This document shows, in pieces, positions 4,576-60,804 of a DNA stretch of 64,000 bases; the first letter of the stretch is position 1, and each line of letters starts with the position of its first letter. Both the position numbers and the translations under genes were made by a program. The stretch is from IMG/VR virus record IMGVR_UViG_3300042350_004528, positions 124,001 through 188,000 of that record; one strand, 5' to 3'. The notes under the pieces are model-generated. The model saw only the letters and a program-made list of their open reading frames with translations, did not search any database and was not told the origin of the DNA.

Positions 4576-4622
4576 TGCGTGTTTTTAATTTACGTTAAGA
4601 TATTTATATTAAAGTTTAACCA

Positions 4623-5339
4623 ATGGCATTAAAAATTTTAAAAGAAAACGAAGAGGGTTTTGGTATAATCATTGACCATGATGCTGGATCAATCACAAGA
4701 GAAATTAACGAACAATTCTTAAACGAAAGTACGATTAGTGGTACTCTTGATTTAACAAAACCAATTATATACTATGCGACACTACAAAAATATGGTGTTG
4801 AGAATAGGAATGGTAGAATATATCCAGAGGATATTTTAAAGAAAGAGGTTGAAAGATATCGCGATGTTATAAGAAGAAACGCAAGCTTTCATGAATTAGA
4901 TCATCCACAAGAATCTGTTATATCATTAAAAGGCGGTTCACCGCATAGAATATTGGATATGTTCTGGGAAGGTAATGCGTTGATTGGTAAACTTGAGATA
5001 TTAGTATCTGATGGTTATAGAAAAAATGGCGTTATATCTTGTCATGGTGATTTAGTCGCTATGTACCTTTCATACGGTATGACACTTGGTATATCATCAA
5101 GGGGTATTGGCTCTCTTAAAAAAATTAATGGTAAAAATGTTGTTCAAAGTGATTTTGAACTTATTTGTTGGGATATAGTATCATCACCATCAACCCCAGG
5201 TTCTTATTTATACAAAAATCCTGAGGAATTTTCTAAATATGATGAGGTACTACCAGACACCGAACCACAAAAAATTATAACAACTAAAGAACCACAAGAT
5301 GAATTTTTGAGTAAATTAAGTTCATTTTTGGGTAAATAA
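4623..5339 (+). CDS. Prohead core protease (T4 gp21-like)
   Basis: NRNGRIYP, ELDHP, GISSRGIGS, WDIVSSPSTPGS motifs. TATTTAT at 4601-4607. Confidence 0.95.
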   Translation: MALKILKENEEGFGIIIDHDAGSITREINEQFLNESTISGTLDLTKPIIYYATLQKYGVENRNGRIYPEDILKKEVERYRDVIRRNASFHELDHPQESVISLKGGSPHRILDMFWEGNALIGKLEILVSDGYRKNGVISCHGDLVAMYLSYGMTLGISSRGIGSLKKINGKNVVQSDFELICWDIVSSPSTPGSYLYKNPEEFSKYDEVLPDTEPQKIITTKEPQDEFLSKLSSFLGK

Positions 5340-7073: not shown

Positions 7074-8660
7074 ATGGGTGCATTATTAGAATCAGGAAAA
7101 GTTGGTAACGTAAGTTTAAATCATTTAAAAACTGTACGTACTGACGTAATTAACAGATGGGACAGCTTAGGTCTTTTAGAAGGCTTAAATGGACATCGTA
7201 AAGAGAACATCGCTCAGTTGTTCGAAAACCAAGCTTCATACATGTTGAACGAAGCTACATCATTAGGTGTTGAAGGTTCTTTCGAAACTGTTGTGTTCCC
7301 TATCGTGAGAAGAGTATTCTCAAAATTATTAGCAAACGAAATCGTTTCTGTACAAGCTTTGAACTTACCTATCGGTAAATTGTTCTACTTCGTACCGAAA
7401 ATCGGTAGATCAGAATTTGGTAAATCAGGTGGCCCAGAAAGCAATGACCCAAGAAACCAAATGCAGATGGCTGAAGCTTTCAGTGCTAACAAGAATACAT
7501 ACGATGCTTTCTACGGAGAGGATGGTTTGTATGATAAATCAAAAGGTGAGGCTACAACAGCTACTGGTACAACTCATACCGCTAGCTTGTTTAAGTTCAG
7601 CACATCTGGTTTCGCGGTAAAAGCTGGTACCACAATTACATCTGGTACAACTGAAATCGTTAAAGTTACTTTAACTGGTGCTGGAAACTTCGAAAATGCT
7701 GAAGAATTCTTAAGCACAATGGCAGTTTCTTATACTGGTGGTACTTTGGATTATTATTTCCCATCTCAGAAATATGGTACACAGTTAATGGATGGTTCAG
7801 GTGTAACTTATATCGCAGTTGTTGCCCCAGATAACGACAACGTTGATTTGTCTGACATCACTGTAACTTACAAGACTTACGATTCATTAGAATTGTCTGA
7901 CTCAATGGGTGAAGTAAGCTTCGAACTTCAATCTGTAACCGTATCGGTTATCGAAAGAAAGTTAAGAGCACAATGGTCTCCAGAATTAGCTCAAGACGTG
8001 TCAGCGTTCCATAACATTGACGCGGAAGCTGAATTAACAGCTTTATTGTCTGAGCAAGTTGCTGCTGAGATCGACCGTGAGATCTTAAGAGACTTACGTA
8101 GAGGTGCTGCTTGGAGATTGTCATGGGATTACGCTGGTGTTACTGGCCGTGGTATCGACACAACCAACGCAGGTGCATTCTATACTCAAAAAGAATGGAA
8201 CCAAACCTTGATCACTGCGATCAATCAAGTTTCTGCTCAAATCCACAAAGCAACTCTTCGTGGTGGCGCAAACTGGATCGTATGTTCAGCTGAGGTTTCT
8301 GCAATTTTTGATGATTTAGAATACTTCCACGTATCTAACGCTGCTCCTGAGCAAGATAAATTCAACATGGGTATTGAAAGAGTGGGTTCACTTTCTGGTC
8401 GTTACCAGGTTTACCGTGATCCTTACTTCCCAGCTGACACAATCTTGATGGGACACAAAGGAACTTCATTGTTAGACACAGGTTACATTTACGCACCATA
8501 CGTGCCAATGCAATTAACCCCTACAATGTATAATCCGTTTACCTTCGCTCCAGTTAAAGGTATCATGACTCGTTACGCTAAGAAAATGGTTAACAACCGT
8601 TTCTATGGTGTGATCAAAGTTAAGAATATCGTTAGCTTCGGTATCGATGGTTTCAGATAA
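7074..8660 (+). CDS. Major capsid protein (T4 gp23-like)
   Basis: RKLRAQWSPELAQD, HNIDAEAEL, EIDREIL, GYIYAPYVP, PFTFAPVKGIMTRYA. Strongly biased codon usage. Confidence 0.97.
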   Translation: MGALLESGKVGNVSLNHLKTVRTDVINRWDSLGLLEGLNGHRKENIAQLFENQASYMLNEATSLGVEGSFETVVFPIVRRVFSKLLANEIVSVQALNLPIGKLFYFVPKIGRSEFGKSGGPESNDPRNQMQMAEAFSANKNTYDAFYGEDGLYDKSKGEATTATGTTHTASLFKFSTSGFAVKAGTTITSGTTEIVKVTLTGAGNFENAEEFLSTMAVSYTGGTLDYYFPSQKYGTQLMDGSGVTYIAVVAPDNDNVDLSDITVTYKTYDSLELSDSMGEVSFELQSVTVSVIERKLRAQWSPELAQDVSAFHNIDAEAELTALLSEQVAAEIDREILRDLRRGAAWRLSWDYAGVTGRGIDTTNAGAFYTQKEWNQTLITAINQVSAQIHKATLRGGANWIVCSAEVSAIFDDLEYFHVSNAAPEQDKFNMGIERVGSLSGRYQVYRDPYFPADTILMGHKGTSLLDTGYIYAPYVPMQLTPTMYNPFTFAPVKGIMTRYAKKMVNNRFYGVIKVKNIVSFGIDGFR

Positions 8661-30600: not shown

Positions 30601-31557
30601 TGTACCAGACGTACCGTTTGTCCCACTTTCACCCGATGTTCCTGATGTTCCTGTTGTCCCCGATGTTCCTGATGTGCCAGATGTGCTTGGCAACACCATA
30701 TATTTGTCAATTCTTTTTGCTACGATTATAACAGAGGGCGCCGCTGGATAATTAACCCCAGCCCCTAAAGCTGTTATTTGTACATGTTGATTTGTGGATA
30801 AAAATACAAACTCAACACAATCATTAGCTTGTAAATTAAATTGATATGCAACAAATGGTAATTGATATGCGCCATTTCCGCTTAATGTTATAGTTGATGT
30901 TGTCCTGGGCTCGTCATTGCCATTAATTCTTGCCCAAATTATAATATCAGTACCGTTTGCATTTGATGCGGCTTCAATTTGAGCTGAATATCCTATTTCA
31001 TAAACACCAGCATTATCTACGGTAATTTGTGAATTATTTTGTACACTAATGCCATTTGCAATTTCGGTTGTATTATATTCCCAAACGGTTGGTATACTTG
31101 AACCACTGACTACTTGTGTGGTTGAATCACTAAACGACCCATAATAATTATCTCCAGTCCACGAAGTACCAGATGAACCTGCTGTTCCCGAAGTACCAGT
31201 AGTTCCTGATGTACCTGAAGAACCAGAAGTTCCCGACTCACCAGATGTCCCCGATGTACCTGAGTAACCAGATGTTCCTGAGGTACTAGCGGCGGAATAT
31301 GTGAATTGACCCGTTAGCGGATCAAATGTTACGACATATTGCGGATTTAATTCTTGAGTTAATTCCTGATTAACCCAATTACTACCATTATAAACTAAAA
31401 TACTACCAGCTGTTGCGCCAGTTGTTATTATTACATCAGTTAGGTCATCCAGACCTAAGTTCTCAATTGCATTTTTTAGATTATCAAAATTCGCGTCAAG
31501 TTCGCCGAATGTTAAAGGTCTACCTAGTGCGCATCTTAAATATATTGTAACCGCCAT
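15607..31557 (-). CDS. Giant (5316 aa) Gly-X-Y Ser/Thr-rich collagen-like fibre protein with C1q/BclA-like globular domains
   Basis: N-terminus [21 protein letters not shown] resembles phage fibre attachment segments. Beta-sandwich at about aa 135-285 (YYGSF...[11 protein letters not shown]). About 4700 aa of period-3 [19 protein letters not shown]-terminal beta domain (TTVQFDT..YD...RFVIQ). TATTTAT upstream. Confidence 0.85.
16660..30690 (-). repeat. About 14-kb period-9-nt coding repeat (Gly-X-Y triplets) with synonymous variation
   Basis: Plus strand is built of units such as GTTCCTGAT, GTTCCTGAA, GAACCAGAA, GTACCTGAT. Confidence 0.95.
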
Positions 31558-49448: not shown

Positions 49449-50834
49449 ATGAGCAAATACACCGAGGAACAACTTAAATTTATTAACTATAACGGGAACG
49501 ATTCTGTTATATTGTCCGCAACCGCTGGTTCAGGTAAAACACACTCAACTGTTGGTAGGTTGAATAAAATGATTGAAGATGGAGTCGATCCCAGTCGAAT
49601 TATCTTCTTTAGTTTCACGAACGATGCTGTTAATGAGCTAAGATCGAGGATAAAACATGACGTTAAAATAACCACAATTCATAGCTTCACAAGCTCAATT
49701 TTGGGTAAAATGGGGCTTTTTAAGCCAATTGTGACCTTTTATGAGTTTACTAACTGGTATAAGGACAAATACAAACCACACCCAAAGGATCCGATGAAAA
49801 TTAAAATGGATTACGCCAGAAATGTAGATAGATTCTACGAAGAGGGTGCTCAGATATCCGCTGGGTTTTCAGCTTATAAATTGCAAAATGCGGATAACAT
49901 CAAAGTCATGAAACCTAGTTTTTATGATGAATATTCGGCTTTCATTAAAGAAACTAAGAGTCGAGATTTTTCTGATATGTTAATTGATACCGAGAAGTAT
50001 TCAAGAAATGCTAAATATAAAGGATATTTTGAGAATTTGTATGATTATATTTTCGTTGACGAATACCAAGACACGTCAACACTTCAAATGAAGATACTAT
50101 TGGCGATTAAAGCCAAGCAATATCATTTGATTGGTGATAAGAACCAATCAATATATGGGTTTTCTGGTGCGAATTGTGAAGAAATTGAGAATTTATTAAT
50201 GAAAAACTCAACAGTAACTCAAATGACACTAACCAAGAATTTCAGGTCAACAAAAAAAATAGTTGAAAACTCAAATCGATATAGTAGTCTAGTAGCGGTT
50301 CCACATCACGAAGAAGATGGCTACATACATGATAATCTAATCAACGATGTTATGATGTATAACATGATGAATGACGGCAAACCTTTAACGGTATTGGCTA
50401 GAACAAACAATGTGATAAAAGAAATTGAAAAAGAATGCCTTAAGAAAAAAATTAAAATGCGTTATTTTAATTTTATATCACCTCAAGACATTGAAAAGAT
50501 TAATGAGGGTAAAGTTAACCCATCATTAAAGAAAAAAATTGATTCGGTTTCGCCTTACTACGGAAACACCTTTAATTTGATTAATTTTATTAAGGAAAAT
50601 CAAGAATCAGATGTTTTTGTAACTAGTATTCACAAAAGTAAAGGTCGTGAATTCCCAAGATGTATTATCATCAATTCAATCGACCCTGATATGTTGGCTG
50701 AAACGGACTATGATTTCGAAGAATATAGTTTTTTAACAAATAGTGGTGAGATTAATCAGGAAGCTAAAAATGTCCACTATGTGGCTGTTACCAGACCAAA
50801 AGAAGAATTATACTTCCTAGTGTACGAAAATTAA
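49449..50834 (+). CDS. UvrD/Rep-family SF1 helicase (compact)
   Basis: ATAGSGKT, FSFTN, TIHSF, VDEYQD, GDKNQSIYGF, NFRS, SIHKSKGREF, YVAVTRPK. Confidence 0.93.
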   Translation: MSKYTEEQLKFINYNGNDSVILSATAGSGKTHSTVGRLNKMIEDGVDPSRIIFFSFTNDAVNELRSRIKHDVKITTIHSFTSSILGKMGLFKPIVTFYEFTNWYKDKYKPHPKDPMKIKMDYARNVDRFYEEGAQISAGFSAYKLQNADNIKVMKPSFYDEYSAFIKETKSRDFSDMLIDTEKYSRNAKYKGYFENLYDYIFVDEYQDTSTLQMKILLAIKAKQYHLIGDKNQSIYGFSGANCEEIENLLMKNSTVTQMTLTKNFRSTKKIVENSNRYSSLVAVPHHEEDGYIHDNLINDVMMYNMMNDGKPLTVLARTNNVIKEIEKECLKKKIKMRYFNFISPQDIEKINEGKVNPSLKKKIDSVSPYYGNTFNLINFIKENQESDVFVTSIHKSKGREFPRCIIINSIDPDMLAETDYDFEEYSFLTNSGEINQEAKNVHYVAVTRPKEELYFLVYEN

Positions 50835-51017: not shown

Positions 51018-52193
51018 TTAAATGTAATTAATAATCTTTTTAAATCTATTAATCGCCTCGTTAAGTTTCTCATCTTCTTCGTAAACTTTACCTTCAGCAC
51101 CAGCTCTCATTTTCATAAAAGAACCCTCTTCTTTAACTTCTTCCTGACCACCCTCTTCCATTGGCTTATCTTCACCTTCAGCAAAAGTACCGTCTTCTCT
51201 TACAGCGCCCGATTCAATATCATCCATACTTGGTACAGCGTATTTGTTAGTCTCTTGTTCTTCGTAATCTTTTATCATAGCTTCAATCTCATCAACACCA
51301 TCTTGAGCGTTTTTGGTGAAACCTGTTAGTCTGCTATAAGCATTACTCAACCACTGTTTAACTTTTCCGAACATTTCTTCAACACCCTCAAAAACTTTCG
51401 AACCATCAATCTTTAATTGGCCTTTAACCTTTGAGGCTACTTTAGAGTTTTCTAAAATTTGTTCAAGAACTTTTCTAGTGTTCTCGTTAACTTTTGTTAA
51501 CGCAGTCTCAAACGCATCTTTATATGATGTTGTTAATTTTTCAGATTCCTGGATTATTTCAACCAACATCTCATCTATTGAAATTTTTAGTTTTTCGGCA
51601 CCTTGGGTCTGACCTTTAAATGCATCCATAACCTCTGGAACCAAAGCGCTTTTTTGTGTTTCCAAATCAGCTATTGATTCTTTATAAGTTTTTAACGCCT
51701 CATCTAATTGAGTTTGAATTGTTTTTAATTCAGCTATTTTTTGGTTAATTGTATTTTCCATATTTTCATTTATATTTTTTTTATCGTCATTGGTTTTAAC
51801 ACCAATCTTGGTGGTTTTACCCCAAACTGATGTTCTTATTTTACCCTGTTTGTTTTTTAATGTCACCTCAACTTTTCCACTCGGCGTTTTAGCCCCACTT
51901 GAAACTGAAACTATTTCTTCACCACTGGTAATTATATCACCCTTTTTTAAGTATTGGGCTTCTTTTCGATCAACACCTTCCTGTAAACTTTTTTCATCTT
52001 TATCAATACCCATGGCAACTCTAAAATCATTATAATCGTAAGCCAAGTCGGTTGCATATCTGTAAACGGCTATATCAATTTTACCGTCTGGGTATTTACC
52101 CCAGCAATACACCCATTTCTCACCACCCATTTCAAATGGCGTTTCATCTCTGTATGGTTTGTAATATTCAACAACATCCATAGTACTTCTCAT
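51018..52193 (-). CDS. Multi-module protein with C-terminal tag KLNEAINRFKKII
   Basis: Modules separated by LQEG and INEN. Coiled coil. TATTTAT at 52211-52217 (minus). Confidence 0.7.
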   Translation of the reverse strand: MRSTMDVVEYYKPYRDETPFEMGGEKWVYCWGKYPDGKIDIAVYRYATDLAYDYNDFRVAMGIDKDEKSLQEGVDRKEAQYLKKGDIITSGEEIVSVSSGAKTPSGKVEVTLKNKQGKIRTSVWGKTTKIGVKTNDDKKNINENMENTINQKIAELKTIQTQLDEALKTYKESIADLETQKSALVPEVMDAFKGQTQGAEKLKISIDEMLVEIIQESEKLTTSYKDAFETALTKVNENTRKVLEQILENSKVASKVKGQLKIDGSKVFEGVEEMFGKVKQWLSNAYSRLTGFTKNAQDGVDEIEAMIKDYEEQETNKYAVPSMDDIESGAVREDGTFAEGEDKPMEEGGQEEVKEEGSFMKMRAGAEGKVYEEDEKLNEAINRFKKIINYI

Positions 52194-52270
52194 AATGTGA
52201 TATTTTAATGATAAATAGTTTGCTTTTAATTAAAGTTTCGTATATTTACATATAAATAAACCTTACCACT

Positions 52271-52426
52271 ATGACGTATTTTTTTTATTCAAAAAATGAC
52301 AAAAAAAGAGAACCGATTAAAACTTTAAATAATATTGGTTCAAGGCTAGCTGCGGCAAAATATTTTTCAGAGTTAAAAAAATTATCTCTTAAAGAGTTTT
52401 TGAAAGTTTTTTCTATTTCCAGGTAA
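52271..52426 (+). CDS. Small protein (51 aa, MTYFFYSKND...), not in ORF track
   Basis: ATG 52271 to TAA 52426, 1 nt before the next ATG. Confidence 0.55.
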   Translation: MTYFFYSKNDKKREPIKTLNNIGSRLAAAKYFSELKKLSLKEFLKVFSISR

Positions 52427-52427
52427 A

Positions 52428-52625
52428 ATGGGTTTTAATAAAAGGCATATAGATTTTGAAAGGATAAAAAGTCATTACAAGCAAGATGGTATTGAATCTT
52501 TAAAACTTTTATTCTCTCCTAAAGTTGATGCTTATATTTTTTCGGATATGATTTCTCACAAAATTTATGAAATGTTTGAGAATAAAGAATATAGAAAAAT
52601 ATCGTGCCTTATCAGAATTGATTAA
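52428..52625 (+). CDS. Hypothetical protein (MGFNKR...)
   Basis: 65-aa ORF. Confidence 0.6.
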   Translation: MGFNKRHIDFERIKSHYKQDGIESLKLLFSPKVDAYIFSDMISHKIYEMFENKEYRKISCLIRID

Positions 52626-52670
52626 AAATCTTTTACTAAACGGTGATATATTTATTCCAAAAATAAATAA

Positions 52671-52907
52671 ATGCACGGAAAAACCATAAAACAACTTTTA
52701 GCATTAAAAGAAGAACTCAATTCAATTTTAGAAACTCGTAGTGAGAAATTATTAGAATCAACCAAATCATCTTATCTTCAAGAAGAATTACAAAGAAACA
52801 TTGTCGATTACATCTCAGAAACAATTGACCAGATCGATATGATTATGGACAACATCGAAGGTGGTGAATATGATGAGAACGATAATGAAGAGTTAGATGA
52901 TTATTAA
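52671..52907 (+). CDS. Small acidic helical protein
   Basis: TATTTAT at 52649-52655. LKE/LLE/LQE sites. Confidence 0.65.
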   Translation: MHGKTIKQLLALKEELNSILETRSEKLLESTKSSYLQEELQRNIVDYISETIDQIDMIMDNIEGGEYDENDNEELDDY

Positions 52908-52960
52908 GATATTCCACCTTAGAGTGGTATTTTAGGATCGTTCATGGTTATGGACAAACT

Positions 52961-52991
52961 AAGGTCGGAATTCGCTACTCCGACCTTTTTT
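52961..52991 (+). terminator. Intrinsic terminator at the end of a structured 3' region
   Basis: AAGGTCGGA-ATTCGCTAC-TCCGACCTT followed by TTTT. Confidence 0.8.
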
Positions 52992-53027
52992 ATTTGCGCT
53001 GGATATTTATCTAAGTAACACATTTCA

Positions 53028-53645
53028 ATGAATCATCATATCGAAGACGAATTAAAACAAAAGTACCCAGACATCAGGTTTGAGTTATACCCAAATGAAA
53101 AGCACAAAAGGATATATCTCACTGGATTTATGGTTCCACCTAACATGCGTGGAACTGGTATTGGTACTTCTTTTATGAACGATTTAACAAGTCTTGCTGA
53201 TCAACACGGTTATAAATTAACATTAACACCATCAAGCAGTTATGGTGGAAATGTGAACAGATTGAAAGATTTCTACCAGAGATTTGGTTTTGTTTTTAAT
53301 AAAGGTGATAATCGTGATTTCACACACAAGGAAGATATGTACAGGGATCCTAAGATTAATGAAGAGGATTCGTCAAGCACATCGAGCACATCAAGTGGTT
53401 CAAGTGGTGGGACATCAGCCTCAAATAGTCCAGTACCAGATAGAGTTAAAAAAGGAAAAGCAAATCCAATATCAAATACTGGTAAATACGAATTTGGTAC
53501 AACCAGAGGAAAAGCAAATCCAATATCAAATACTGGTGCTTATGACTTTGGAACAAATCGTGGCCCAGCAAACCCAATATCAGAAAATAAAAATAATCGC
53601 CTGGATGAGGCGATTATTAATATGAAAAAATTGATTAATTTTTAA
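53028..53645 (+). CDS. GNAT-family acetyltransferase with RGKANP repeats and C-terminal tag
   Basis: VPPNMRGTGIGT (acetyl-CoA motif A), LKDFYQRFGF. Three (K/R)G(K/P)ANPIS repeats, then RLDEAIINMKKLI. Confidence 0.8.
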   Translation: MNHHIEDELKQKYPDIRFELYPNEKHKRIYLTGFMVPPNMRGTGIGTSFMNDLTSLADQHGYKLTLTPSSSYGGNVNRLKDFYQRFGFVFNKGDNRDFTHKEDMYRDPKINEEDSSSTSSTSSGSSGGTSASNSPVPDRVKKGKANPISNTGKYEFGTTRGKANPISNTGAYDFGTNRGPANPISENKNNRLDEAIINMKKLINF

Positions 53646-53646
53646 T

Positions 53647-54741
53647 TTAAGACCATTTGTTTAACATTTGGTAATTGTGAACTTCGTTCCATTTATTTGC
53701 GTCATAATTACCCCCTTTCCAATATTGGAATGAACCTATTCTTATATCACCCCCAGCTGTTAAGCCCAATCTGAAAATATTATCAAATATCAGTTCAGTT
53801 GTTCCAACTTGTTGTACATAATTTTCATTACTATCATCAGCAATAAATAGTTGACCAGCATCGTTTCTACCAAAAATAAGGGTTATCCAAGTATTAACTT
53901 GTGCACTCATTGATACGGTATCAGCACCCATAGTAAATTGGTATACGTTTGTAGCAATATCATATCTAAGTCTCGTAATCCCCCCATCAGCATAAATTAT
54001 TGCTGGTGAATTACTGGCCTGCGGTGTGAATCTGAGCCTCAACGCAAACATAAAAGACTCACCAGATGAAGTATTAAGGGGTGCTATATATGAAGCCGCA
54101 TTGGATGAATCTAAATCTATGTATAAATTTGCCGCATTAAATCTTCTATTATAAGTTGAATTATCGCCCGCGGTTTGTATTGATGTGGAGATATTTCCAG
54201 CGACATTTTTTGTAAACCATCTTTCTATTACACCATCAGTTGCTTGAACCAAATCGTAACATTTTGTTAAATTAGTCTCAAGAATGTCGCAATTAAGATT
54301 ACCGAAATCAATATTTAACATTAAATTAGGGGTGTCAGCGTATTTGTATTTTGATAAATCAGCCAAAAAATGATTTAAATTTTCATTTTCAATAACGTAT
54401 CTTTTGGCAACATCCACGTCACTATAATACGTGCCATCAATTTTTATTGAATGCAAACTATTAATTATGTGTACAATTTCCGCATTGGTTTTACCAGTGA
54501 CGTGATATGTTGGAATCGTGGGCTCACCGCCAACACCTTCTACATTTCCTCTTGATACGATATAATATTTTTCGCCACCAAAATTACCCGCAGGATAACC
54601 TGGTCTCCAAGTAAGACCCGTTGAATTTCCGTCTTGAAAATTAAACCCTTCATTAATGTGGCCATAGCAATATTTACCAATTCTATGATATTGATCAATC
54701 GTTGGTGCGGTACCGTATTGTATAGTTACTGGAACTGACAT
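53647..54741 (-). CDS. Putative virion protein with degenerate LamG-like domain
   Basis: Architecture resembles the first half of 34640..36325 (NLMLNIDFG, NTWITLIFGR). TATTTAT at 54758-54764 (minus). Confidence 0.5.
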   Translation of the reverse strand: MSVPVTIQYGTAPTIDQYHRIGKYCYGHINEGFNFQDGNSTGLTWRPGYPAGNFGGEKYYIVSRGNVEGVGGEPTIPTYHVTGKTNAEIVHIINSLHSIKIDGTYYSDVDVAKRYVIENENLNHFLADLSKYKYADTPNLMLNIDFGNLNCDILETNLTKCYDLVQATDGVIERWFTKNVAGNISTSIQTAGDNSTYNRRFNAANLYIDLDSSNAASYIAPLNTSSGESFMFALRLRFTPQASNSPAIIYADGGITRLRYDIATNVYQFTMGADTVSMSAQVNTWITLIFGRNDAGQLFIADDSNENYVQQVGTTELIFDNIFRLGLTAGGDIRIGSFQYWKGGNYDANKWNEVHNYQMLNKWS

Positions 54742-54804
54742 AATTTAATATTTTACAATAAATAGTATTAAAGTTTAAAATAACTCGAGATATTTATATT
54801 ATAT

Positions 54805-55518
54805 ATGAATTTAAACGAGCAGATATTAAGAATGAAAACCATGATCGGTTTATCCGAGGTTACCATTCCACAATCAATTAAAAAATCGGTTGGTGATGTT
54901 TTGTTTGGTTCAAATCCAATAATTGCAAAAATTCAAAACAAACCAATTGAAAAGAATACCCCATACGAGGATAACCTGGTTGACAAAATAAAGGATTGGA
55001 CATTTCAATCAACAGAAAAATCCGAGATGGGCGTTGTATCAACAATATCCGATTTAATTAAACTAAAAAAATATTTTCCAGAGGTTCTCAACCCACCGTA
55101 TGGTGAAAAAGTTTACAGAGGAACATCGGTTAAATTACCAGAGCTATCCAAATTCATAAAAGAAAACCCAGAACATGATGTTTTGGATAACGGTGCGGTT
55201 AAATTTAAAACACCCTACCAGTATACCCCAAAAAGAGAAGTTAGTAGTTGGAGTGCATCCTTGTTCTACGCATCATCATTTCAGGGCAAATCATTCGAGA
55301 GTGCTGTGAATGTCCCAGTTATTTTTGAAACAACTGTCGATGACACATTCATTATGAATCCAAAAGTTATGAACATCATATTTAAATCAACGGGCGGTGT
55401 TCACCAGGATTTTATAAGGGACGAGGACGAGATTATGAAGTACAACCCGAGTGGTACTTACCATCTAATTTTGTCAGAAGACGAATACGAAATATTCGCA
55501 CCAAATGCCGAGGTCTAA
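54805..55518 (+). CDS. Putative ADP-ribosyltransferase (R-S-E type) with N-terminal tag
   Basis: KVYRG, VSSWSASLFYASSF and RDEDEI follow the R / SxS / ExE order. N-terminus LNEQILRMKTMIGL. Confidence 0.6.
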   Translation: MNLNEQILRMKTMIGLSEVTIPQSIKKSVGDVLFGSNPIIAKIQNKPIEKNTPYEDNLVDKIKDWTFQSTEKSEMGVVSTISDLIKLKKYFPEVLNPPYGEKVYRGTSVKLPELSKFIKENPEHDVLDNGAVKFKTPYQYTPKREVSSWSASLFYASSFQGKSFESAVNVPVIFETTVDDTFIMNPKVMNIIFKSTGGVHQDFIRDEDEIMKYNPSGTYHLILSEDEYEIFAPNAEV

Positions 55519-55605
55519 AACCGCCGAAGGCGGTTGCGAAAAAATTTTTCTTTTAAATGAATTTTTCTTATTTTTGTGATATATATGTAAAATAATCAGA
55601 ATATA

Positions 55606-55788
55606 ATGTCGATGACCAACGAAGAAATAGCAGAAGAAATCTACCACCAAGCGTTTGATCTCGGATTTATCGATTTACTTCGTGAAAAGGTTGGTTATAT
55701 TTACAAAACAACGCATGTGAAAGATCACAGTGATGTTGTGCAAAAAGCATATAATTTATTGGTTACAGAAGGTTTGATACAACTATGA
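55606..55788 (+). CDS. Hypothetical protein (60 aa)
   Basis: Its TGA overlaps the ATG of the Asn leader peptide. Confidence 0.6.
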   Translation: MSMTNEEIAEEIYHQAFDLGFIDLLREKVGYIYKTTHVKDHSDVVQKAYNLLVTEGLIQL

Positions 55789-55864
55789 GATTCAGAAGAA
55801 AATACAATAACAATAATAATAAAATAGTAATTGGAAATCCTGTCATTTGACAGGATTTTTTTTT
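55785..55864 (+). promoter_or_regulatory. Putative Asn-sensing attenuator: leader peptide MRFRRKYNNNNNKIVIGNPVI* (55785-55850) overlapping a terminator (55835-55864)
   Basis: Five consecutive Asn codons plus a sixth in the stem. Hairpin AAATCCTGTC-ATTT-GACAGGATTT followed by a T run, 28 nt before the AsnRS-like gene. Confidence 0.7.
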
Positions 55865-55892
55865 GCGCCAAAAATTAAACAAAAAAAAACAA

Positions 55893-56708
55893 ATGAAAAA
55901 CACAGAAACTTACAATGAACTCGTGCAGAAGATGCGCAAATTCTTTCTTGAAAGAGGATTCAAGGAAGTGCCAACACAATCAAGATTATCAATTCTCGCG
56001 GCTTGTGAGAACCCACACTCGGTTAAAACGTTCGAGTATGGTGGTTTGATCTGGCCGTTGCCACAGACTGGACAGATGTGGCTTGAGTATGAGTTGTTAA
56101 AGAATCCAGAATGGAATGGCGTATTTTGCGTATCAACATCGTACAGAGAAGAAAAGAACCCAATCCCAGGAAGGCATGAGCTTATCTTCCCAATGTTTGA
56201 GTTTGAGTCAAAGGGAACCATGGAGGATTTAATCAAAATGGAAGGCGACCTTTTGGCTTATCTTGGATTTGGTGATGAGATGGTTCAAGTTAAATACGAT
56301 GATGTGTGTGAGGAATACGGTGGGGTACCAATTCTTGAGGATGAGCATGAATCCAGAATGTGGAATGAAAAGGGTAATGTTGTTTCATTACAACACTTCC
56401 CAATCAGAACAAATCCATTCTGGAACATGAAACACAATAACGATGGGATTTTCAACAAGGTTGATGTGATTCTTTACGGACAGGAAACAATTGGATCCGC
56501 CGAGAGAAGCTGCGATGTTGAGAAGATGAGAGAAATGTTTTATGCTATTGAGAACGGTGCGTATTGCGCCAAGTTGTTCGAGTTATTCGGAAAAGAAAGG
56601 GTTGAGGCTGAGCTTGAGGAATTCTTGAAGCACAATTTCTTCCCAAGATATGGTGGTGGAATCGGGATGACCAGAATGGCCAGAGCGTATGAGTTATTAA
56701 AGAAATAA
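55893..56708 (+). CDS. Class II aaRS (Asn/Asp) catalytic-domain-only protein, probably an asparagine synthetase of the AsnRS-derived type
   Basis: Motif 1 (MRKFFLERGFKEV), motif 2 (SYREE...GRHELIFPMFEFE), ETIGSAER, motif 3 (GGGIGMTRM). No anticodon-binding domain. Confidence 0.8.
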   Translation: MKNTETYNELVQKMRKFFLERGFKEVPTQSRLSILAACENPHSVKTFEYGGLIWPLPQTGQMWLEYELLKNPEWNGVFCVSTSYREEKNPIPGRHELIFPMFEFESKGTMEDLIKMEGDLLAYLGFGDEMVQVKYDDVCEEYGGVPILEDEHESRMWNEKGNVVSLQHFPIRTNPFWNMKHNNDGIFNKVDVILYGQETIGSAERSCDVEKMREMFYAIENGAYCAKLFELFGKERVEAELEEFLKHNFFPRYGGGIGMTRMARAYELLKK

Positions 56709-56732
56709 AAAAAGGGGCGAAAGCCCCTTTTT
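56709..56732. terminator. Bidirectional terminator
   Basis: AAAAAGGGGC-GAAA-GCCCCTTTTT. Confidence 0.9.
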
Positions 56733-56742
56733 CTTTTTATCT

Positions 56743-57360
56743 TTAATCTTCTCCGCCCCAATCTTTATAATCACCAAATCTTTCGTTGTCTTCATAACCA
56801 GCGTTGTACGCTTCGATTTCTTCTGGTGTTAAATCGGTGATTCTCTCACCTTTGTAAGTTCCTTCTGGATACTTATGTGGGCTCTTGGGTCTTCTGTAAT
56901 ATGAATCGGCGTGACCGCGATCATATGGTGATCCGTGCGAATCATCGTATTTCTCACTTCTACCCTCCTGAAATATTTCAGTTCTTGGTTCATCGTAATG
57001 ATCCAACTTACCTATTGGGTAACGTTCGCCCGTCTCAGCGTTGTATTTAATGATTATCTTACCATCATCACTATCACCTATAAAATAATGTACATTATCA
57101 TCAGCTAAACTATAATATAATGGTCTGTCATAATCGTCAAACTCTCTTTGAACAACTTTTTCACCACTTGCGGATTCGATCGCGGCTTTTTCGAAATCGA
57201 AATCACTTTCCATTTCCTCGCCACCTCTTTCGGAATTATAGTTAAAAATATCATCGGTGTATGCATTTGGATTATCCACCTTTGATAGATCAATTTCTTC
57301 ATTAAGACCCATTATTTTGCGGAGTCTCGCAATTTCTTCATTTAATGTATTCTTTTTCAT
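56743..57360 (-). CDS. Tagged multi-module protein (LNEEIARLRKIMGL)
   Basis: Start MKKNTLNEE at 57360, TATTTAT at 57380-57386. C-terminal small domain HGSPYDRGHADSYY...AYNAGY. Confidence 0.75.
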   Translation of the reverse strand: MKKNTLNEEIARLRKIMGLNEEIDLSKVDNPNAYTDDIFNYNSERGGEEMESDFDFEKAAIESASGEKVVQREFDDYDRPLYYSLADDNVHYFIGDSDDGKIIIKYNAETGERYPIGKLDHYDEPRTEIFQEGRSEKYDDSHGSPYDRGHADSYYRRPKSPHKYPEGTYKGERITDLTPEEIEAYNAGYEDNERFGDYKDWGGED

Positions 57361-57415
57361 AGAAAAAAACAATTTATTGATAAATAGTTTGTCAAATCCA
57401 AAAATATTTATGAAC

Positions 57416-57724
57416 ATGGTAAAACTTTTTGAGAGAATACATATCCCATTGTGGATCGCAAAGGATATGTTCTGGATGTTGGGTCAGGGCGAACTCTCAT
57501 TGGCTTTCGCGATACCAACCATAATATTATCAACAATACTCATAACAGTAAAACAGGGGTCGGAAAGGTGGCTCGAGATGATGATGGCCTTTTGGTTATC
57601 AGCCAATACCTTATGGATGTCCCACGAGCTTTTTCATACGGACACAAAAGAAATTGCATTAACCTGTTTTTTATTTGGCATTTTAACAATTCCAATCTAT
57701 TTATTAAAGATAAAAGAAGAATAA
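57416..57724 (+). CDS. Small multi-pass membrane protein
   Basis: HIPLWIAKDMFWM..., about four hydrophobic segments. Start at 57410 or 57416. Confidence 0.65.
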   Translation: MVKLFERIHIPLWIAKDMFWMLGQGELSLAFAIPTIILSTILITVKQGSERWLEMMMAFWLSANTLWMSHELFHTDTKEIALTCFLFGILTIPIYLLKIKEE

Positions 57725-57732
57725 AACTAGTT

Positions 57733-59307
57733 ATGAAACTAACTGAGGAAATAAAGAAAATGCAATCCATGATGGGCATTATGTCCGAGGATGTGAAAAT
57801 ATACGCAAACGGTGTTGGATCTGAGGTGTTTAATGATAACGAACATTACGGAAAGGTTGATGATATTAATTTAAATGACACCATAGCAAATGAACCGTTT
57901 AAGGATATGGAATACATGGATAAAAGTTCCAATGTCGATGATATGGTTCAAGCCTTGAAATCTGGTGAAGAGCTGCCACCAATACTTGTTATTCAACACC
58001 CCTTCGACCAATCAAAATATTTGGTTGTCGATGGAAACCATAGAAGATACGCATATGACCGCGCAGGTGCTGATAAGATTCCAGCCGTTGTGATTAAACC
58101 AGAGGATGTTTTGTTAATGCAATCCGATTGGGGTGATCCAGAGGAAAAGGCGATCAGATTATCTGATGTTATATCCGATCCAGAGTTGTTTGCTCGAGAA
58201 AACACAAGAATGTTAATTGACAAGTATTTTGTTAAACCAGACGGATCACATGAGTTCGAATTGAATGAAAATTTATATGAGGAAAAGAAAAAAGCCGATC
58301 GTTGTTTAAGAATAGCGAGAAGAAAATACAGCAAACCATCAGCATATAGATCTGGTGCAATCGTTCAATGCAGAAGAGGAAAGATATGGAGAGGTTTGAA
58401 GGAAGAGGAGATCCAAATGATTGACAACGCACCAGAGGAAATGCAAGGTTTGATCGCCAAGGCTCACGATGCTTTGACGTGGAAGAGGGGTCGAAAAGAA
58501 TATGCTCCAGATTTTAATGAACTTCAAACATGGGTGGATGCTTATTTGGAGACTGACGGTGGAATGCATGAAGCGAAGAAAACCGATTTCTCAAAGGAGA
58601 AAAAGAGCGGACTTCACGGATGGTTTTCAAGAAGAGGTGGTGGCGGAAGCAAAGGATGGGTTGATTGCAACACATGCAGAAAAGTTGACGGAAAGAAAAA
58701 ATGCAAGGCTTGTGGAAGACAAAAGGGTGAGGTGAGAGCCAAGTACCCATCATGCAGACCAACACCAGCATCATGCGGAACACCAGGAAAGGGAAAATCT
58801 TGGGGCAAGACAAAGGAAGAGGGTTACAGCTTGAATGAAGCCAAGGAGATGAAGAGAGTTGCTTTGCTTTTCATTGTGATTGACAACGAAGCGTTGTTGT
58901 TCAAGAGAAGCGAAGACGAAACAACAAATCCAGGAAAATACGGAATGCTTGGTGGTGGAATTGAAAAGAATGAAACGCCAGAGGAAGCAATCGTGAGAGA
59001 GATCAGAGAAGAAGCTGGTGTTGAGTTGAAATCATTCAAACCACTGAAGAAATATATTTACAACAACGAGTGTGAATTAAACGTATTCTACACAAACGAA
59101 TTTCCAATTGATGATGTTGTGCTTGACAAGAACGAACACACATCGTACAAATATTTCACGATGGAACAATTGATAGATATGGATCCAAAGGATATGATTG
59201 GTTCCAACAAAGAAATCGCGAAGGATTACAACGAGATCGCAAACAAGAAAAAGAAATTGGAAGAAGAGATAGAGAGAATAAAAGCTACGATGAAGATTCT
59301 TATTTAA
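57733..59307 (+). CDS. Tagged polyprotein-like fusion: ParB/Srx domain, two Cys-rich basic modules, NUDIX hydrolase
   Basis: LPPILV...VDGNHRR (ParB). PSAYRSGAIVQC and GWVDCNTC...CGR...YPSCRP modules. Nudix box GGGIEKNETPEEAIVREIREEAG. Tags at both termini. Start at 57733. Confidence 0.8.
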   Translation: MKLTEEIKKMQSMMGIMSEDVKIYANGVGSEVFNDNEHYGKVDDINLNDTIANEPFKDMEYMDKSSNVDDMVQALKSGEELPPILVIQHPFDQSKYLVVDGNHRRYAYDRAGADKIPAVVIKPEDVLLMQSDWGDPEEKAIRLSDVISDPELFARENTRMLIDKYFVKPDGSHEFELNENLYEEKKKADRCLRIARRKYSKPSAYRSGAIVQCRRGKIWRGLKEEEIQMIDNAPEEMQGLIAKAHDALTWKRGRKEYAPDFNELQTWVDAYLETDGGMHEAKKTDFSKEKKSGLHGWFSRRGGGGSKGWVDCNTCRKVDGKKKCKACGRQKGEVRAKYPSCRPTPASCGTPGKGKSWGKTKEEGYSLNEAKEMKRVALLFIVIDNEALLFKRSEDETTNPGKYGMLGGGIEKNETPEEAIVREIREEAGVELKSFKPLKKYIYNNECELNVFYTNEFPIDDVVLDKNEHTSYKYFTMEQLIDMDPKDMIGSNKEIAKDYNEIANKKKKLEEEIERIKATMKILI

Positions 59308-59413
59308 CCTTCGCAAAGACAAACGCTACCTTCACATTCTGGGCAGCAAGTTCCTGGTTCAACCACGGGTAAAAACATTAAAGACAATTTTTATTATAGA
59401 AAAAAAGGATCGA

Positions 59414-59965
59414 TTAGTTCGATCCATTTTCATTTATATTCTTTTCAACATTCTGTTTCATCCCGCGAACCATTTTAAGAAGACTGGAGTTATCGGTCTT
59501 AACGATGGTTGTCACCTGTGGTTCAGGTTCACGTGGCATTATCATGGCTGATACCTCACCGTCCCCAGAACCAGAACCGCCAGTTTCCATGCGAAGAGTT
59601 CTTTCGAAACGAACTGGTGAGCTGGTTGAGGTTGAAACAACTTTATTATGTGTCTTTTGAGCTTCACTCTCCATATTGGTCAACATCTCAAGAATTTCCT
59701 TCTCACGAGATATGAATCTGTCCGTGCAAACGGTTTGATTGCTGATAACAATATCATTAAGTTCATTCACCCTGTCACTAAGGCTCTTTATCATAACCTT
59801 TTGGTTTTCCACCTTGTGTAATAATTCCTCATTATCTTGGGTAAGACCTTCGATAAGCTTAGGGCCAATTGAGATAATCACAATGGACAAAAGAACAATC
59901 CCAAGAGCAGCAAGACGCTGTTTCATGGAGATCTTTGAGATGATTTCTGAAATATATTTAAACAT
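59414..59965 (-). CDS. Membrane-anchored coiled-coil protein
   Basis: TM LAALGIVLLSIVIISIG followed by a coiled coil. TATTTAT at 59984-59990 (minus). Confidence 0.65.
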   Translation of the reverse strand: MFKYISEIISKISMKQRLAALGIVLLSIVIISIGPKLIEGLTQDNEELLHKVENQKVMIKSLSDRVNELNDIVISNQTVCTDRFISREKEILEMLTNMESEAQKTHNKVVSTSTSSPVRFERTLRMETGGSGSGDGEVSAMIMPREPEPQVTTIVKTDNSSLLKMVRGMKQNVEKNINENGSN

Positions 59966-60120
59966 GTCTCTATTTGTTTAAATATAAATATTCGTGTTTA
60001 CAGTAAATTGTTTACTGTAAACTAAATTAAAAGCAACGGGGGTAAAAATTACCATAATGTGTCACCATCCCCAGGAGGGTGTTCGGAATAAAGGGTTTGT
60101 AAAAATTGTGGGGTTATGAA

Positions 60121-60804
60121 TTATATTCCAACGGTTGGTGAGTCCATGTTCTCACTTAAACCATAATGTTTCTCAACCAAAGTTTCAAAGTAATTTAAAA
60201 GTCCTTCTTTACCAATACCACTTTCTTTGGCTTTCGCAATGAAGTCATCAGCACTAGCACCAATTCCACCTTGAATCCAGTCCACATCAGCAGCTGTGAT
60301 TATTTTTTCATTGATTGGTTCCTCACTCATTCTATTTAAAAAACTATTTAATTTTCCATTACTATAAGTTAAACCAAGTTCTTTGGTTAACTTTTCAAGT
60401 ACTCTAACCACTTGAGTTTTATATGGGTCTGAATAAGCTCTAACAAAAGATCCAGAGCCACGATTAAACATGAAACCGTATATTCTTTGATCTATTTGAC
60501 TAATCACATATTTTTTCTTCTCTTCTGGTTCTGTTGGTATTGACCCAGTATATTTTTGGTCTGACTCAACAAAATCGGTTACCAGTTTATTAAAAGCTTC
60601 CACAAATTCTTTTGCTTTTGTTGGATTTTCTTGCCAAGAATCATTACGAGCACTATTATTAATTGATAAACCTTTAATTATTGGTTCCATACGTCCAAAG
60701 CCATCATCAATTATTTTAACGGAATCAACGAACTCGTTTAGATTCTCATTAAGGCCCATCATCTGGCGTATTCTTAAAACTTCTTCATTTAAGGTATTAT
60801 TCAT
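60121..60804 (-). CDS. Tagged protein (LNEEVLRIRQMMGL)
   Basis: TATTTAT at 60826-60832 (minus). Confidence 0.75.
   Translation of the reverse strand: MNNTLNEEVLRIRQMMGLNENLNEFVDSVKIIDDGFGRMEPIIKGLSINNSARNDSWQENPTKAKEFVEAFNKLVTDFVESDQKYTGSIPTEPEEKKKYVISQIDQRIYGFMFNRGSGSFVRAYSDPYKTQVVRVLEKLTKELGLTYSNGKLNSFLNRMSEEPINEKIITAADVDWIQGGIGASADDFIAKAKESGIGKEGLLNYFETLVEKHYGLSENMDSPTVGI

What the first reader, a model, noticed from the sequence alone, without database searches (positions are those of the whole stretch)
54805..55518. Candidate injected ADP-ribosyltransferase
Seen: VYRG, SSWS...A..F and DEDE in the order of R-S-E class ART catalytic motifs, behind the N-terminal tag. Known: T4 Alt is a head-packaged ART injected with the DNA. 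Inference: a minimal Alt analogue acting on host proteins or nucleic acid at entry.
Basis: partly seen in the sequence, partly recalled or inferred. Interest (0 to 1): 0.6.

Follow-up and report, generated by a model that had tools for sequence, protein, structure and literature searches.

The report
Tagged phage ADP-ribosyltransferase, ModB-like
This 237-residue gene of a 299-kb freshwater T4-type jumbo phage very probably encodes an arginine-directed ADP-ribosyltransferase from an unannotated family distantly related to T4 ModA/ModB, and it carries a short terminal tag, shared with five neighbouring proteins, that looks like a T4-style head-targeting propeptide, so delivery with the DNA is plausible but not shown.

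Summary
ORF 54805-55518 (+) has Y104-R105-G106, S148-W149-S150 and E207-x-E209. In 119 diverse homologues R105 and E209 are invariant and S148, W149 and E207 are 97-99% conserved. A deep-alignment AlphaFold model (pLDDT 90.5) matches almost only ADP-ribosyltransferases. The best match is Vis toxin (Z 7.1-7.3), followed by C3, pertussis, cholera and iota/VIP2-type toxins. Profile-profile comparison with T4 ModA/ModB gives 85-87% probability (E about 4e-6). It pairs R105 with ModB R73 and S148 with S99. E207/E209 pair with E171/E173 only in a low-confidence extension of that alignment. No Pfam or PHROG model detects the family, which has at least 381 clusters at 50% identity.

The "injected" part is circumstantial. 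The phage has a T4-type head: a gp23-like capsid protein and a gp21-family protease. The 17-residue N-terminal tag is bounded by L/I-x-E motifs, which is the gp21 cleavage logo. It recurs 7 times in 6 proteins within 10 kb and joins domains in fused relatives. The same domain also sits in polyvalent proteins and in fusions annotated as head-morphogenesis or portal proteins. No virion proteomics or RNA data exist.

Verdict: a new family member of a known enzyme kind, with a testable head-loading tag.

The parts
54805..55518 (+). ART gene, 237 aa (P0001)
   Evidence: ORF list and translation. Single copy in the 298,833-bp genome. 15 close and at least 381 distant cluster representatives.
54808..54858 (+). 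N-terminal tag, residues 2-18: L-x-E, an amphipathic helix, then G-L-x-E. Predicted propeptide, with cleavage after E18 inferred.
   Evidence: Tag HMM hit, E 3e-6. Modelled as helix 3-13. Present in all close homologues but in none of the 150 distant representatives.
54862..55089 (+). N-terminal helical subdomain (about residues 20-95) with the conserved E49-x-x-T52-x-x-E55
   Evidence: Model helices 23-95. Structural alignments to Vis, C3, HopU1, iota and VIP2 start at model residue 31-37. E49 117/119, T52 114/119, E55 116/119. The confident hhalign alignment pairs this stretch with ModB residues around the invariant E36.
55114..55122 (+). Y104-R105-G106, the catalytic Arg motif on strand 102-110
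   Evidence: R105 is invariant and aligned to ModB R73-G74. ModB R73A abolishes activity (PMC10468400).
55243..55281 (+). S148-W149-S150 (an S-x-[ST] variant of the STS motif) on strand 147-150, followed by A156..F159
   Evidence: Conservation counts. Aligned to ModB S99, A107 and F110, all invariant in the ModA/B alignment.
55420..55431 (+). D206-E207-D208-E209: the E-x-E motif at the start of strand 209-212
   Evidence: E207 116/119, E209 119/119. Aligned to ModB E171-x-E173 only in the extended, low-confidence part of the alignment.
54790..54797 (+). Promoter-like motif [AC]TATTTAT, 7 nt before the ATG
   Evidence: The motif lies in -60..-5 of 42/309 crude genes, against 6.8 expected (maximum 14 in 200 shuffles) and 11 in the antisense control. 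It does not mark timing.
55519..55535 (+). 7-bp GC-rich hairpin right after the stop codon; possible terminator, weak evidence
   Evidence: Fold -11.3 kcal/mol, z -1.5. Not called by the terminator scan.
53028..53645 (+). GNAT acetyltransferase with a C-terminal tag (nt 53598-53642). Fused to the ART through a single tag in relative P0015.
   Evidence: Pfam Acetyltransf_7/1, tag, fusion.
51018..52193 (-). 391-aa protein of unknown function with a C-terminal tag (nt 51021-51065)
   Evidence: No significant family.
56743..57360 (-). Roughly 205-aa protein of unknown function with an N-terminal tag (nt 57298-57348). The likely start is the ATG at 57360.
57733..59307 (+). ParB_N + DUF5872 + NUDIX protein with tags at both ends (nt 57736-57789 and 59254-59304)
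   Evidence: Pfam, PHROG, tags.
60121..60804 (-). 227-aa protein of unknown function with an N-terminal tag (nt 60745-60795)
4623..5339 (+). Prohead protease of the T4 gp21 family (Peptidase_S77), the candidate enzyme that would cut at the tag
   Evidence: PF03420, 68.9 bits, E 5.9e-20, above the curated cut-off.
7074..8660 (+). gp23-type major capsid protein. Portal at 545-2392.
   Evidence: phrog_138 E 1e-68 and phrog_213 E 6e-62. tblastn hits 2,588 phage records, including KVP40 gp23 at 27%.

Best explanation
The gene encodes a catalytically competent mono-ADP-ribosyltransferase of the R-S-E class. Its helical N-terminal subdomain and split-sheet NAD-binding core resemble those of Vis, C3-like exoenzymes and T4 ModA/ModB. 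R105 and S148 would hold NAD+, and E209 would catalyse transfer. E207, the first E of E-x-E, points to arginine side chains of host proteins as acceptors (inferred from the rule known for R-S-E enzymes). The enzyme would reprogramme or disarm the host, as T4 Alt/ModA/ModB do. The 17-residue N-terminal tag most likely acts as a capsid-targeting propeptide. In that reading it docks the protein in the prohead core and is cut off after G-L-x-E18 by the phage's gp21-family protease. The mature enzyme of about 219 aa would then travel with the DNA into the next cell, together with the other tagged enzymes of the cluster (GNAT, ParB_N-NUDIX and three unknowns). Shown here: the fold, the motif conservation, the relationship to ModA/B, the tag and its distribution, and the T4-type head genes. 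Inferred: NAD-dependent activity (probability about 0.85), arginine specificity (about 0.6), packaging and cleavage (about 0.45-0.5), and the host targets (unknown).
For: Motifs and conservation. Fold: the model has pLDDT 90.5 and pTM 0.85. An unbiased search of 48,161 chains puts Vis first (Z 7.1, 147 residues, rmsd 4.0), and most of the top 50 rows are ART-superfamily proteins. In the second look at Foldseek's ranking, every one of the 50 rows shown is ART-superfamily. The top Foldseek rows are cholera, Vis and pertussis toxins at probability 0.8-0.92. In the Atlas, DRAT scores TM 0.50 and ADPrib_exo_Tox/ART 0.46-0.48. Alignment ranges to cholera toxin/LT (model 99-102 to chain 1-4) and to pertussis S1 (98 to 2) are consistent with R105 lying on R7/R9, from ranges only. 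Homology: hhalign against ModA/ModB gives 85% and E 6e-6, or 87.5% and E 3.6e-6 over 181 collinear columns through all three motifs. ModB R73 is experimentally essential. Packaging: the head is T4-type with an S77 protease. T4 gp21 cuts after L/I-x-E, and N-terminal propeptides of 7-10 residues target Alt and the internal proteins into the head; both Alt termini are propeptides (PMC9026906). T4 Alt starts with an I-x-E at residues 4-6. The tag begins with L-x-E and, when N-terminal or internal, ends with [LI]-x-E. It sits at N-termini, at C-termini or between domains. A relative has GNAT-tag-ART as one protein, whereas here each half keeps its own tag. The domain occurs in polyvalent proteins alongside ART-PolyVal, GNAT and SprT-like domains, and in proteins annotated portal, head morphogenesis or minor capsid. 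Polyvalent proteins are predicted to be injected (PMC5512222).
Against: No Pfam or PHROG ART model detects the protein or 68 of its relatives, and HMMER with the family profile finds nothing in T4. Structural Z scores of 5-7 are middling by the tool's own caveat, and the best Foldseek E-value is only 1e-2. The E-x-E pairing with ModB lies in the low-confidence tail of the alignment. For packaging there are no proteomic, RNA or cleavage data. L-x-E is a very short motif. The closest sequence relatives, ModA/ModB, are early, non-packaged enzymes. The gene lies about 47 kb from the head module, next to a UvrD helicase and other non-structural genes. The shared promoter-like motif also precedes ribonucleotide reductase and a tRNA nucleotidyltransferase, so it says nothing about late expression.
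Confidence: 0.55

Rival explanations
1. The enzyme is the same, but it is made inside the infected cell like T4 ModA/ModB and is never packaged. The tag would then be an oligomerisation or docking helix that assembles the neighbouring enzymes (GNAT, ART, ParB_N-NUDIX and others) into one non-covalent 'polyvalent' complex, or a degradation or regulatory signal.
For: The closest profile match is to the non-packaged ModA/ModB, and the size is the same. The tag is an amphipathic helix. It occurs as a linker inside fused proteins. The cluster sits among non-structural genes. The promoter-like motif is shared with nucleotide-metabolism genes.
Against: The tag is bracketed by L/I-x-E motifs in a phage that has a gp21-type protease. 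When the GNAT-ART fusion is split, each product keeps a tag, as expected for an address label needed by each polypeptide. Relatives of the domain are fused to head-morphogenesis or portal proteins and lie in polyvalent proteins.
Confidence: 0.3
2. It is an ART-fold enzyme whose acceptor is not a host protein arginine. Candidates are DNA or RNA bases or ends (as with pierisin/Scabin, DarT, Tpt1/KptA), a small molecule (as with Arr or Vis acting on free arginine or agmatine), or transfer of NAD-capped RNA (RNAylation, as ModB does). Alternatively it mainly hydrolyses NAD+.
For: Vis, the best structural match, modifies free arginine and agmatine. Tpt1/KptA, Arr and Scabin also appear at Z 4-5. 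ModB performs RNAylation (PMC10468400). A NUDIX enzyme, which could act on ADP-ribose or NAD caps, carries the same tag.
Against: DNA-targeting R-S-E enzymes and C3-like Asn-modifying enzymes carry Q-x-E, whereas here E-x-E is kept in 116/119 sequences. Tpt1/KptA, DarT and Arr lack the R-S-E triad. This is an inference from the known rule, not a test.
Confidence: 0.1
3. It is a catalytically dead ART-fold protein used as a structural or binding module.
For: No activity data exist, and no curated ART model hits it.
Against: The only two invariant columns among 119 sequences are the catalytic R and E, and the S and the first E are 97-98% conserved. dN/dS is about 0.1.
Confidence: 0.03

Closest known systems
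T4 ModA / ModB (Pfam PF26816), early ADP-ribosyltransferases
   Same: About 200 aa, with a helical N-terminal part plus an ART core. R-S-ExE active site. Profile-profile match at 85-87% probability and E about 4e-6, collinear through all three motifs. Encoded by a phage of the T4 head-assembly superfamily.
   Different: About 20% identity or less. Not detected by hmmscan against Pfam, nor by a family HMM run against the T4 genome. S-W-[ST] replaces S-F-[ST]. It carries an N-terminal tag that ModA/B lack. ModA/B are made after infection and are not packaged.
T4 Alt (head-packaged, injected ART)
   Same: An R-S-E ART of a T4-type phage. Alt has a short N-terminal propeptide ending in I-x-E, removed by gp21, and also a C-terminal propeptide (PMC9026906). 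The tag here has the same position and the same terminal motif.
   Different: Alt is 682 aa, with its ART core near residues 470-580. There is no significant direct match: the single-sequence hhalign is non-significant, although it paired the two Y-R motifs. The tag is longer (17 aa against 6-10) and unrelated in sequence to T4 targeting sequences.
Vis toxin (Vibrio splendidus) and C3-like exoenzymes; cholera/LT/pertussis, iota/C2/VIP2, HopU1, ExoS
   Same: The best structural matches. Vis scores Z 7.1-7.3 over 136-147 residues at 18-20% identity, and C3 enzymes score Z 5.2-5.5, spanning model residues 31-228.
   Different: There is no detectable sequence homology by HMMER. Those are secreted bacterial toxins or effectors acting on eukaryotic targets, whereas this is a phage protein presumably acting on a bacterium.
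Polyvalent proteins of phages and conjugative elements (Iyer et al. 2017, PMC5512222)
   Same: The same domain sits in two large multidomain proteins: ART-PolyVal + this domain + SprT-like (P0089), and ART-PolyVal + GNAT + DUF3140 + this domain (P0138). The tagged cluster holds GNAT and ParB_N domains, which that paper lists as polyvalent-protein components, plus NUDIX. A relative also has ART-PolyVal with an internal tag.
   Different: Here the domains are separate genes, each with its own terminal tag. [quoted passage not shown]
T4 capsid targeting sequences of internal proteins IPI-III
   Same: A short terminal peptide shared by unrelated proteins of one phage, ending in L/I-x-E, in a phage with a gp21-family protease.
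   Different: The sequence is unrelated. The tag here also occurs at C-termini and between domains. Its function is untested.

Membership tests
R-S-E class mono-ADP-ribosyltransferases | ART fold (split beta-sheet NAD-binding core) | tested here: met
   The model has pLDDT 90.5. In the unbiased search most of the top 50 rows are ART-superfamily, and in the second look all 50 rows shown are. Best is Vis at Z 7.1-7.3. The top Foldseek rows are cholera, Vis and pertussis toxins. Z values are middling, so the case rests on the consistency of the hit list together with the motifs.
R-S-E class mono-ADP-ribosyltransferases | Arg on strand 1, S-x-S/T on strand 2, and [QE]-x-E at strand 5, in that order | tested here: met
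   R105 lies in strand 102-110, S148-W-S150 in strand 147-150, and E207-x-E209 at strand 209-212. Conservation is 119, 117 and 116/119 of 119.
R-S-E class mono-ADP-ribosyltransferases | NAD+-dependent transfer of ADP-ribose | not testable with these tools
   Needs a biochemical assay.
T4 Alt/ModA/ModB clade | Sequence-profile relationship to ModA/ModB | tested here: met
   hhalign gives 85-87.5% probability and E 3.6e-6 to 6e-6, with 120-181 columns. This is a distant relationship, found only by profile-profile comparison.
T4 Alt/ModA/ModB clade | Match to the curated Pfam model (PF26816), or recognition of T4 genes by the family HMM | tested here: not met
   No Pfam family at E <= 10. The A3 profile finds nothing in the T4 genome. 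The single-sequence Alt comparison is non-significant. It is therefore a separate family, at most in the same clade.
Head-packaged, injected proteins (Alt / internal-protein type) | Terminal propeptide ending in L/I-x-E, plus a gp21-family protease in the genome | tested here: met
   The tag ends in G-L-S-E18. All N-terminal and strong internal copies end in [LI]-x-E (one window copy, in the ParB_N-NUDIX protein, reads G-I-M-S-E). Peptidase_S77 scores 68.9 bits.
Head-packaged, injected proteins (Alt / internal-protein type) | Presence of the processed protein in virions and its transfer to the host | not testable with these tools
   The phage is uncultured (lake metagenomes), and no proteome or RNA runs exist.
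Polyvalent proteins | Two or more effector domains in one polypeptide of a phage or conjugative element | tested here: not met
   This protein has a single domain plus the tag. Relatives P0015, P0089 and P0138 do meet the criterion.

The most novel reading that the evidence does not exclude
The tag (L-x-E, an amphipathic helix, then G-[LI]-x-E) is a portable, excisable head-loading address used by a lineage of freshwater T4-type jumbo phages. Any enzyme that acquires it at either end is loaded into the prohead, trimmed by the gp21-type protease and injected. If so, the 10-kb cluster is a 'disaggregated polyvalent protein': a swappable set of injected enzymes (R-S-E ART, GNAT, ParB_N-NUDIX and three unknowns) that fuses and splits at the tags between related phages.
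Probability: 0.4. Interest if true: 0.7.

Novelty: new member of a known kind. Interest (0 to 1): 0.5.

Why it matters
Phage ADP-ribosyltransferases are central host-takeover and counter-defence tools, yet few families beyond T4 Alt/ModA/ModB have been studied. This family has at least 381 clusters at 50% identity. The three Atlas clusters that match it best structurally are 88-100% viral. It has no Pfam model and no functional PHROG annotation. Its members also occur inside polyvalent proteins, where R-S-E enzymes were reported to be absent. The shared tag yields a concrete, testable list of six candidate injected proteins for an uncultured jumbo phage. If it works as proposed, it is a second natural example of modular capsid targeting, and it could be used to predict ejected proteins from sequence alone.

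Tried and rejected
1. Direct family and sequence searches of P0001 found nothing useful: Pfam, PHROG (one non-significant hit), PDB sequences and tblastn against 50,697 phage records.
2. The first AlphaFold model, built from 15 close homologues, was poor (pLDDT 66), and its Foldseek list was noise apart from faint Tpt1 rows. It was superseded by the 119-sequence model.
3. An HMMER profile of the family against PDB sequences, and Pfam scans of 68 members, gave no ART hit. One member matched DRAT at E 0.069.
4. Pfam on ten relatives of 400-480 aa found no domains in their extra regions.
5. The T4 Alt single-sequence hhalign was non-significant. The family HMM found nothing in the T4 genome. The word search with ModB returned only 6 homologues, so the ModA/B profile is shallow.
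6. I tested whether the [AC]TATTTAT motif marks late genes. The motif is real and precedes the protease, a scaffold-like gene, the tail sheath, a virion protein and the giant fibre gene. It also precedes the ribonucleotide reductase small subunit and a tRNA nucleotidyltransferase, so I dropped it as evidence of timing.
7. Terminator after the gene: there is a hairpin, but it is not significant.
8. Microcystis phage Mel-JY01, among the nearest phage records by capsid protein and the nearest cultured one listed, was fetched whole. It has neither the tag nor the ART, so no cultured proxy is available.
9. There is no ART-PolyVal in this genome.
10. Sequencing runs show DNA only, from lake and freshwater samples, with no RNA.
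I rebuilt the tag HMM from stored search hits instead.

Full report
**What is there**

Window 54805-55518 (+) is a clean ORF of 237 codons. The window is part of a 298,833-bp IMG/VR virus record with 34% G+C, rated 100% complete. The same DNA is found in at least 20 lake or freshwater metagenome runs, and no RNA runs hold it.

The phage belongs to the T4 head-assembly superfamily:
- a portal at 545-2392 (phrog_213);
- a Peptidase_S77 (T4 gp21 family) prohead protease at 4623-5339, at 68.9 bits, above the curated cut-off;
- a gp23-type capsid protein at 7074-8660. It is 27% identical to KVP40 gp23 and 33-34% identical to huge uncultured phages and to Microcystis phage Mel-JY01.

**The observation**

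A word search found 15 close homologues, all from metagenomes. The exhaustive profile search found 381 cluster representatives at E <= 1e-3. I aligned 119 of them, most only 22-33% identical to the query. In that alignment:
- The only invariant columns are R105 and E209.
- S148 (117/119), W149 (118), [ST]150 (118), E207 (116, Q in 2), Y104 (112), G106 (110), A156 (99) and F159 (112) follow.
- Residue 208 is free, and D206 and S147 are not conserved.

The real signature is therefore Y-R-G / S-W-[ST] / E-x-E, the classical R-S-E triad. dN/dS against two relatives is 0.09-0.14.

**Fold**

A model built from the 15 close homologues was poor (pLDDT 66). With the 119-sequence alignment the model reached pLDDT 90.5 and pTM 0.85. 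In it R105 lies on strand 102-110, S148 on strand 147-150, and E209 opens strand 209-212.

- Foldseek against the PDB gave weak E-values (best 1.2e-2), but the top rows are cholera toxin A1, Vis, pertussis S1, LT and PltA at probability 0.8-0.92.
- A search that aligns the model to all 48,161 representative chains put Vis first (Z 7.1, 147 residues, rmsd 4.0). Next came a Listeria ART toxin, an ADP-ribosyltransferase toxin/immunity pair (6drh), C3bot2, C3stau2, Arr, HopU1, KptA, TreX, diphtheria toxin, Certhrax, pertussis S1, iota-like toxin, XopAI, ExoS, C2-I, Scabin, ART2.2, VIP2, SdeA and SpvB.
- In the second look at Foldseek's own ranking, all 50 rows shown are ART-superfamily proteins.
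- In the ESM Atlas the nearest named clusters are DRAT (TM 0.50) and ADPrib_exo_Tox/ART (0.46-0.48).

The tool warns that Z below 8 is middling. The case rests on the uniformity of the hit list, on coverage of residues 31-228 by the C3/Vis/VIP2-type enzymes, and on the catalytic triad falling on the expected strands. The alignment ranges to cholera toxin/LT (model 99-102 to chain 1-4) and to pertussis S1 (98 to 2) are consistent with R105 lying on R7/R9. I could check ranges only, not residue pairs.

**Homology**

No curated model sees the family. I built a small ModA/ModB alignment from the T4 record and six homologues. Profile-profile comparison gave 85% probability and E 6.2e-6 over 120 columns. 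It pairs R105-G106 with ModB R73-G74, and S148..A156..F159 with ModB S99..A107..F110. A more permissive run gave 87.5% and E 3.6e-6 over 181 columns and also pairs E207/E209 with E171/E173, at low local confidence. ModB R73A is catalytically dead, and ModA and ModB are described as Arg-specific R-S-EXE enzymes (PMC10468400).

Alt alone gave no significant match, although the aligner paired the two Y-R motifs. HMMER with the family profile finds nothing in T4. I therefore treat this as a separate, unannotated family in or near the Alt/Mod clade. By size it is closer to ModA/B than to Alt.

**The tag**

Residues 2-18 belong to a motif that starts with L-x-E, runs through an amphipathic helix (modelled as helix 3-13), and ends with G-[LI]-x-E when it is N-terminal or internal.

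In this genome it occurs seven times in six proteins, all between window 51018 and 60804, and nowhere else at significance:
- the C-terminus of a 391-aa protein;
- the C-terminus of a GNAT;
- the N-terminus of the ART;
- the N-terminus of a roughly 205-aa protein;
- both ends of a ParB_N-DUF5872-NUDIX protein;
- the N-terminus of a 227-aa protein.

In two related contigs the same genes carry it. It also lies between domains: GNAT-tag-ART as one 408-aa protein, and an ART-PolyVal protein with the tag at residues 247-260. A weaker, non-significant copy (E about 1-2, ending G-E-D-R rather than [LI]-x-E) lies inside the NUDIX protein.

The tag is restricted to the close clade of the ART and is absent from all 150 distant representatives. 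It is therefore a property of the phage lineage, not of the enzyme family.

**Why packaging is plausible**

- T4 gp21 cuts after L/I-x-E.
- N-terminal propeptides of 7 residues (Alt) and 10 residues (internal proteins) target proteins into the prohead and are then removed.
- Alt is trimmed at both ends.
- The targeting sequence has been proposed as the way T4-like phages load varied proteins (PMC9026906).

Here a gp21-family protease is present, and both borders of the tag fit its logo. Cutting would remove N-terminal tags at their end and C-terminal tags at their start, and would excise internal ones. When the GNAT-ART fusion is split, each half keeps a tag.

Independently, the ART domain occurs in two polyvalent proteins next to ART-PolyVal, GNAT and SprT-like domains. 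It also matches viral proteins annotated as portal, head-morphogenesis and minor capsid proteins. Polyvalent proteins are predicted to be delivered with the DNA, and ART and GNAT domains in them are proposed to act on host RNA polymerase (PMC5512222, PMC7824862).

**Why it is not shown**

- There are no proteomic, cleavage or expression data.
- L-x-E is a very short motif.
- ModA/B, the nearest relatives, are not packaged.
- The cluster lies about 47 kb from the head module, among non-structural genes.
- A promoter-like motif, [AC]TATTTAT, is truly enriched upstream of genes: 42/309 against 6.8 expected. The ART shares it with the protease, the tail sheath and a virion protein. But it also precedes ribonucleotide reductase and a tRNA nucleotidyltransferase, so it gives no timing.
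- The nearest cultured phage by capsid protein has neither the tag nor the enzyme.

**Verdict**

An active R-S-E mono-ADP-ribosyltransferase is very likely (about 0.85). Arginine as acceptor is likely (about 0.6, from E-x-E). Head packaging through the tag is about even (0.45-0.5). The enzyme is a new family member of a well-known kind. The tag cluster is the more original part and is directly testable.

Noticed in passing
window 15607-31557 (-): A 5,316-aa ORF that is 30% Ser, 28% Gly and 20% Thr. It consists of G-T-S-type triplet repeats (collagen-like, Gly every third residue) between globular N- and C-terminal ends. The repeat keeps the antisense frame open for 4,779 aa (16412-30751, +). 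It is preceded by the [AC]TATTTAT motif. Probably a giant fibre.
   Followed up: partly
window 51018-60804: A terminal tag (L-x-E, a helix, then G-[LI]-x-E) occurs 7 times in 6 proteins and nowhere else in the 299-kb genome. It sits at N-termini, at C-termini, or between domains in relatives.
   Followed up: yes
L003:10001-11227 (P0015) versus window 53028-53645 and 54805-55518: In a 310-kb relative, GNAT and ART are one 408-aa protein joined by a single tag. In the window and in L005 a 364-372-aa gene on the opposite strand lies between them, and each half has its own tag.
   Followed up: yes
P0089 (859 aa) and P0138 (1632 aa): An R-S-E ART domain related to ModA/B sits in polyvalent proteins next to the H-Y-D type ART-PolyVal. 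[quoted passage not shown]
   Followed up: partly
window 54949-54969 (residues 49-55): E49-x-x-T52-x-x-E55 in the N-terminal helical subdomain is as conserved as the catalytic residues (117, 114 and 116 of 119). The aligned stretch of ModA/B holds an invariant Glu (ModB E36). Its role is unknown.
   Followed up: no
whole genome; e.g. window 54790-54797, 4598-4605: The promoter-like motif [AC]TATTTAT lies within 60 nt upstream of 42 of 309 crude gene calls (6.8 expected), with a median of 17 nt to the ATG. It precedes both structural and nucleotide-metabolism genes.
   Followed up: partly
window 57733-59307 (+): A ParB_N + DUF5872 + NUDIX protein is tagged at both ends. Its NUDIX part also matches a PHROG annotated as portal protein, which suggests portal-NUDIX fusions elsewhere.
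   Followed up: no
window 55863-56708 (+): An untagged 281-aa class II aminoacyl-tRNA-synthetase-like core (tRNA-synt_2, E 6e-14; phrog_29758, E 2e-98, function unknown) lies just downstream of the ART gene.
   Followed up: no
L003:5352-7799 versus window 49449-50834: The UvrD-type helicase is 815 aa in the relative, with a faint LAGLIDADG hit, against 461 aa here. This may be an intein or homing-endonuclease insertion in the relative.
   Followed up: no
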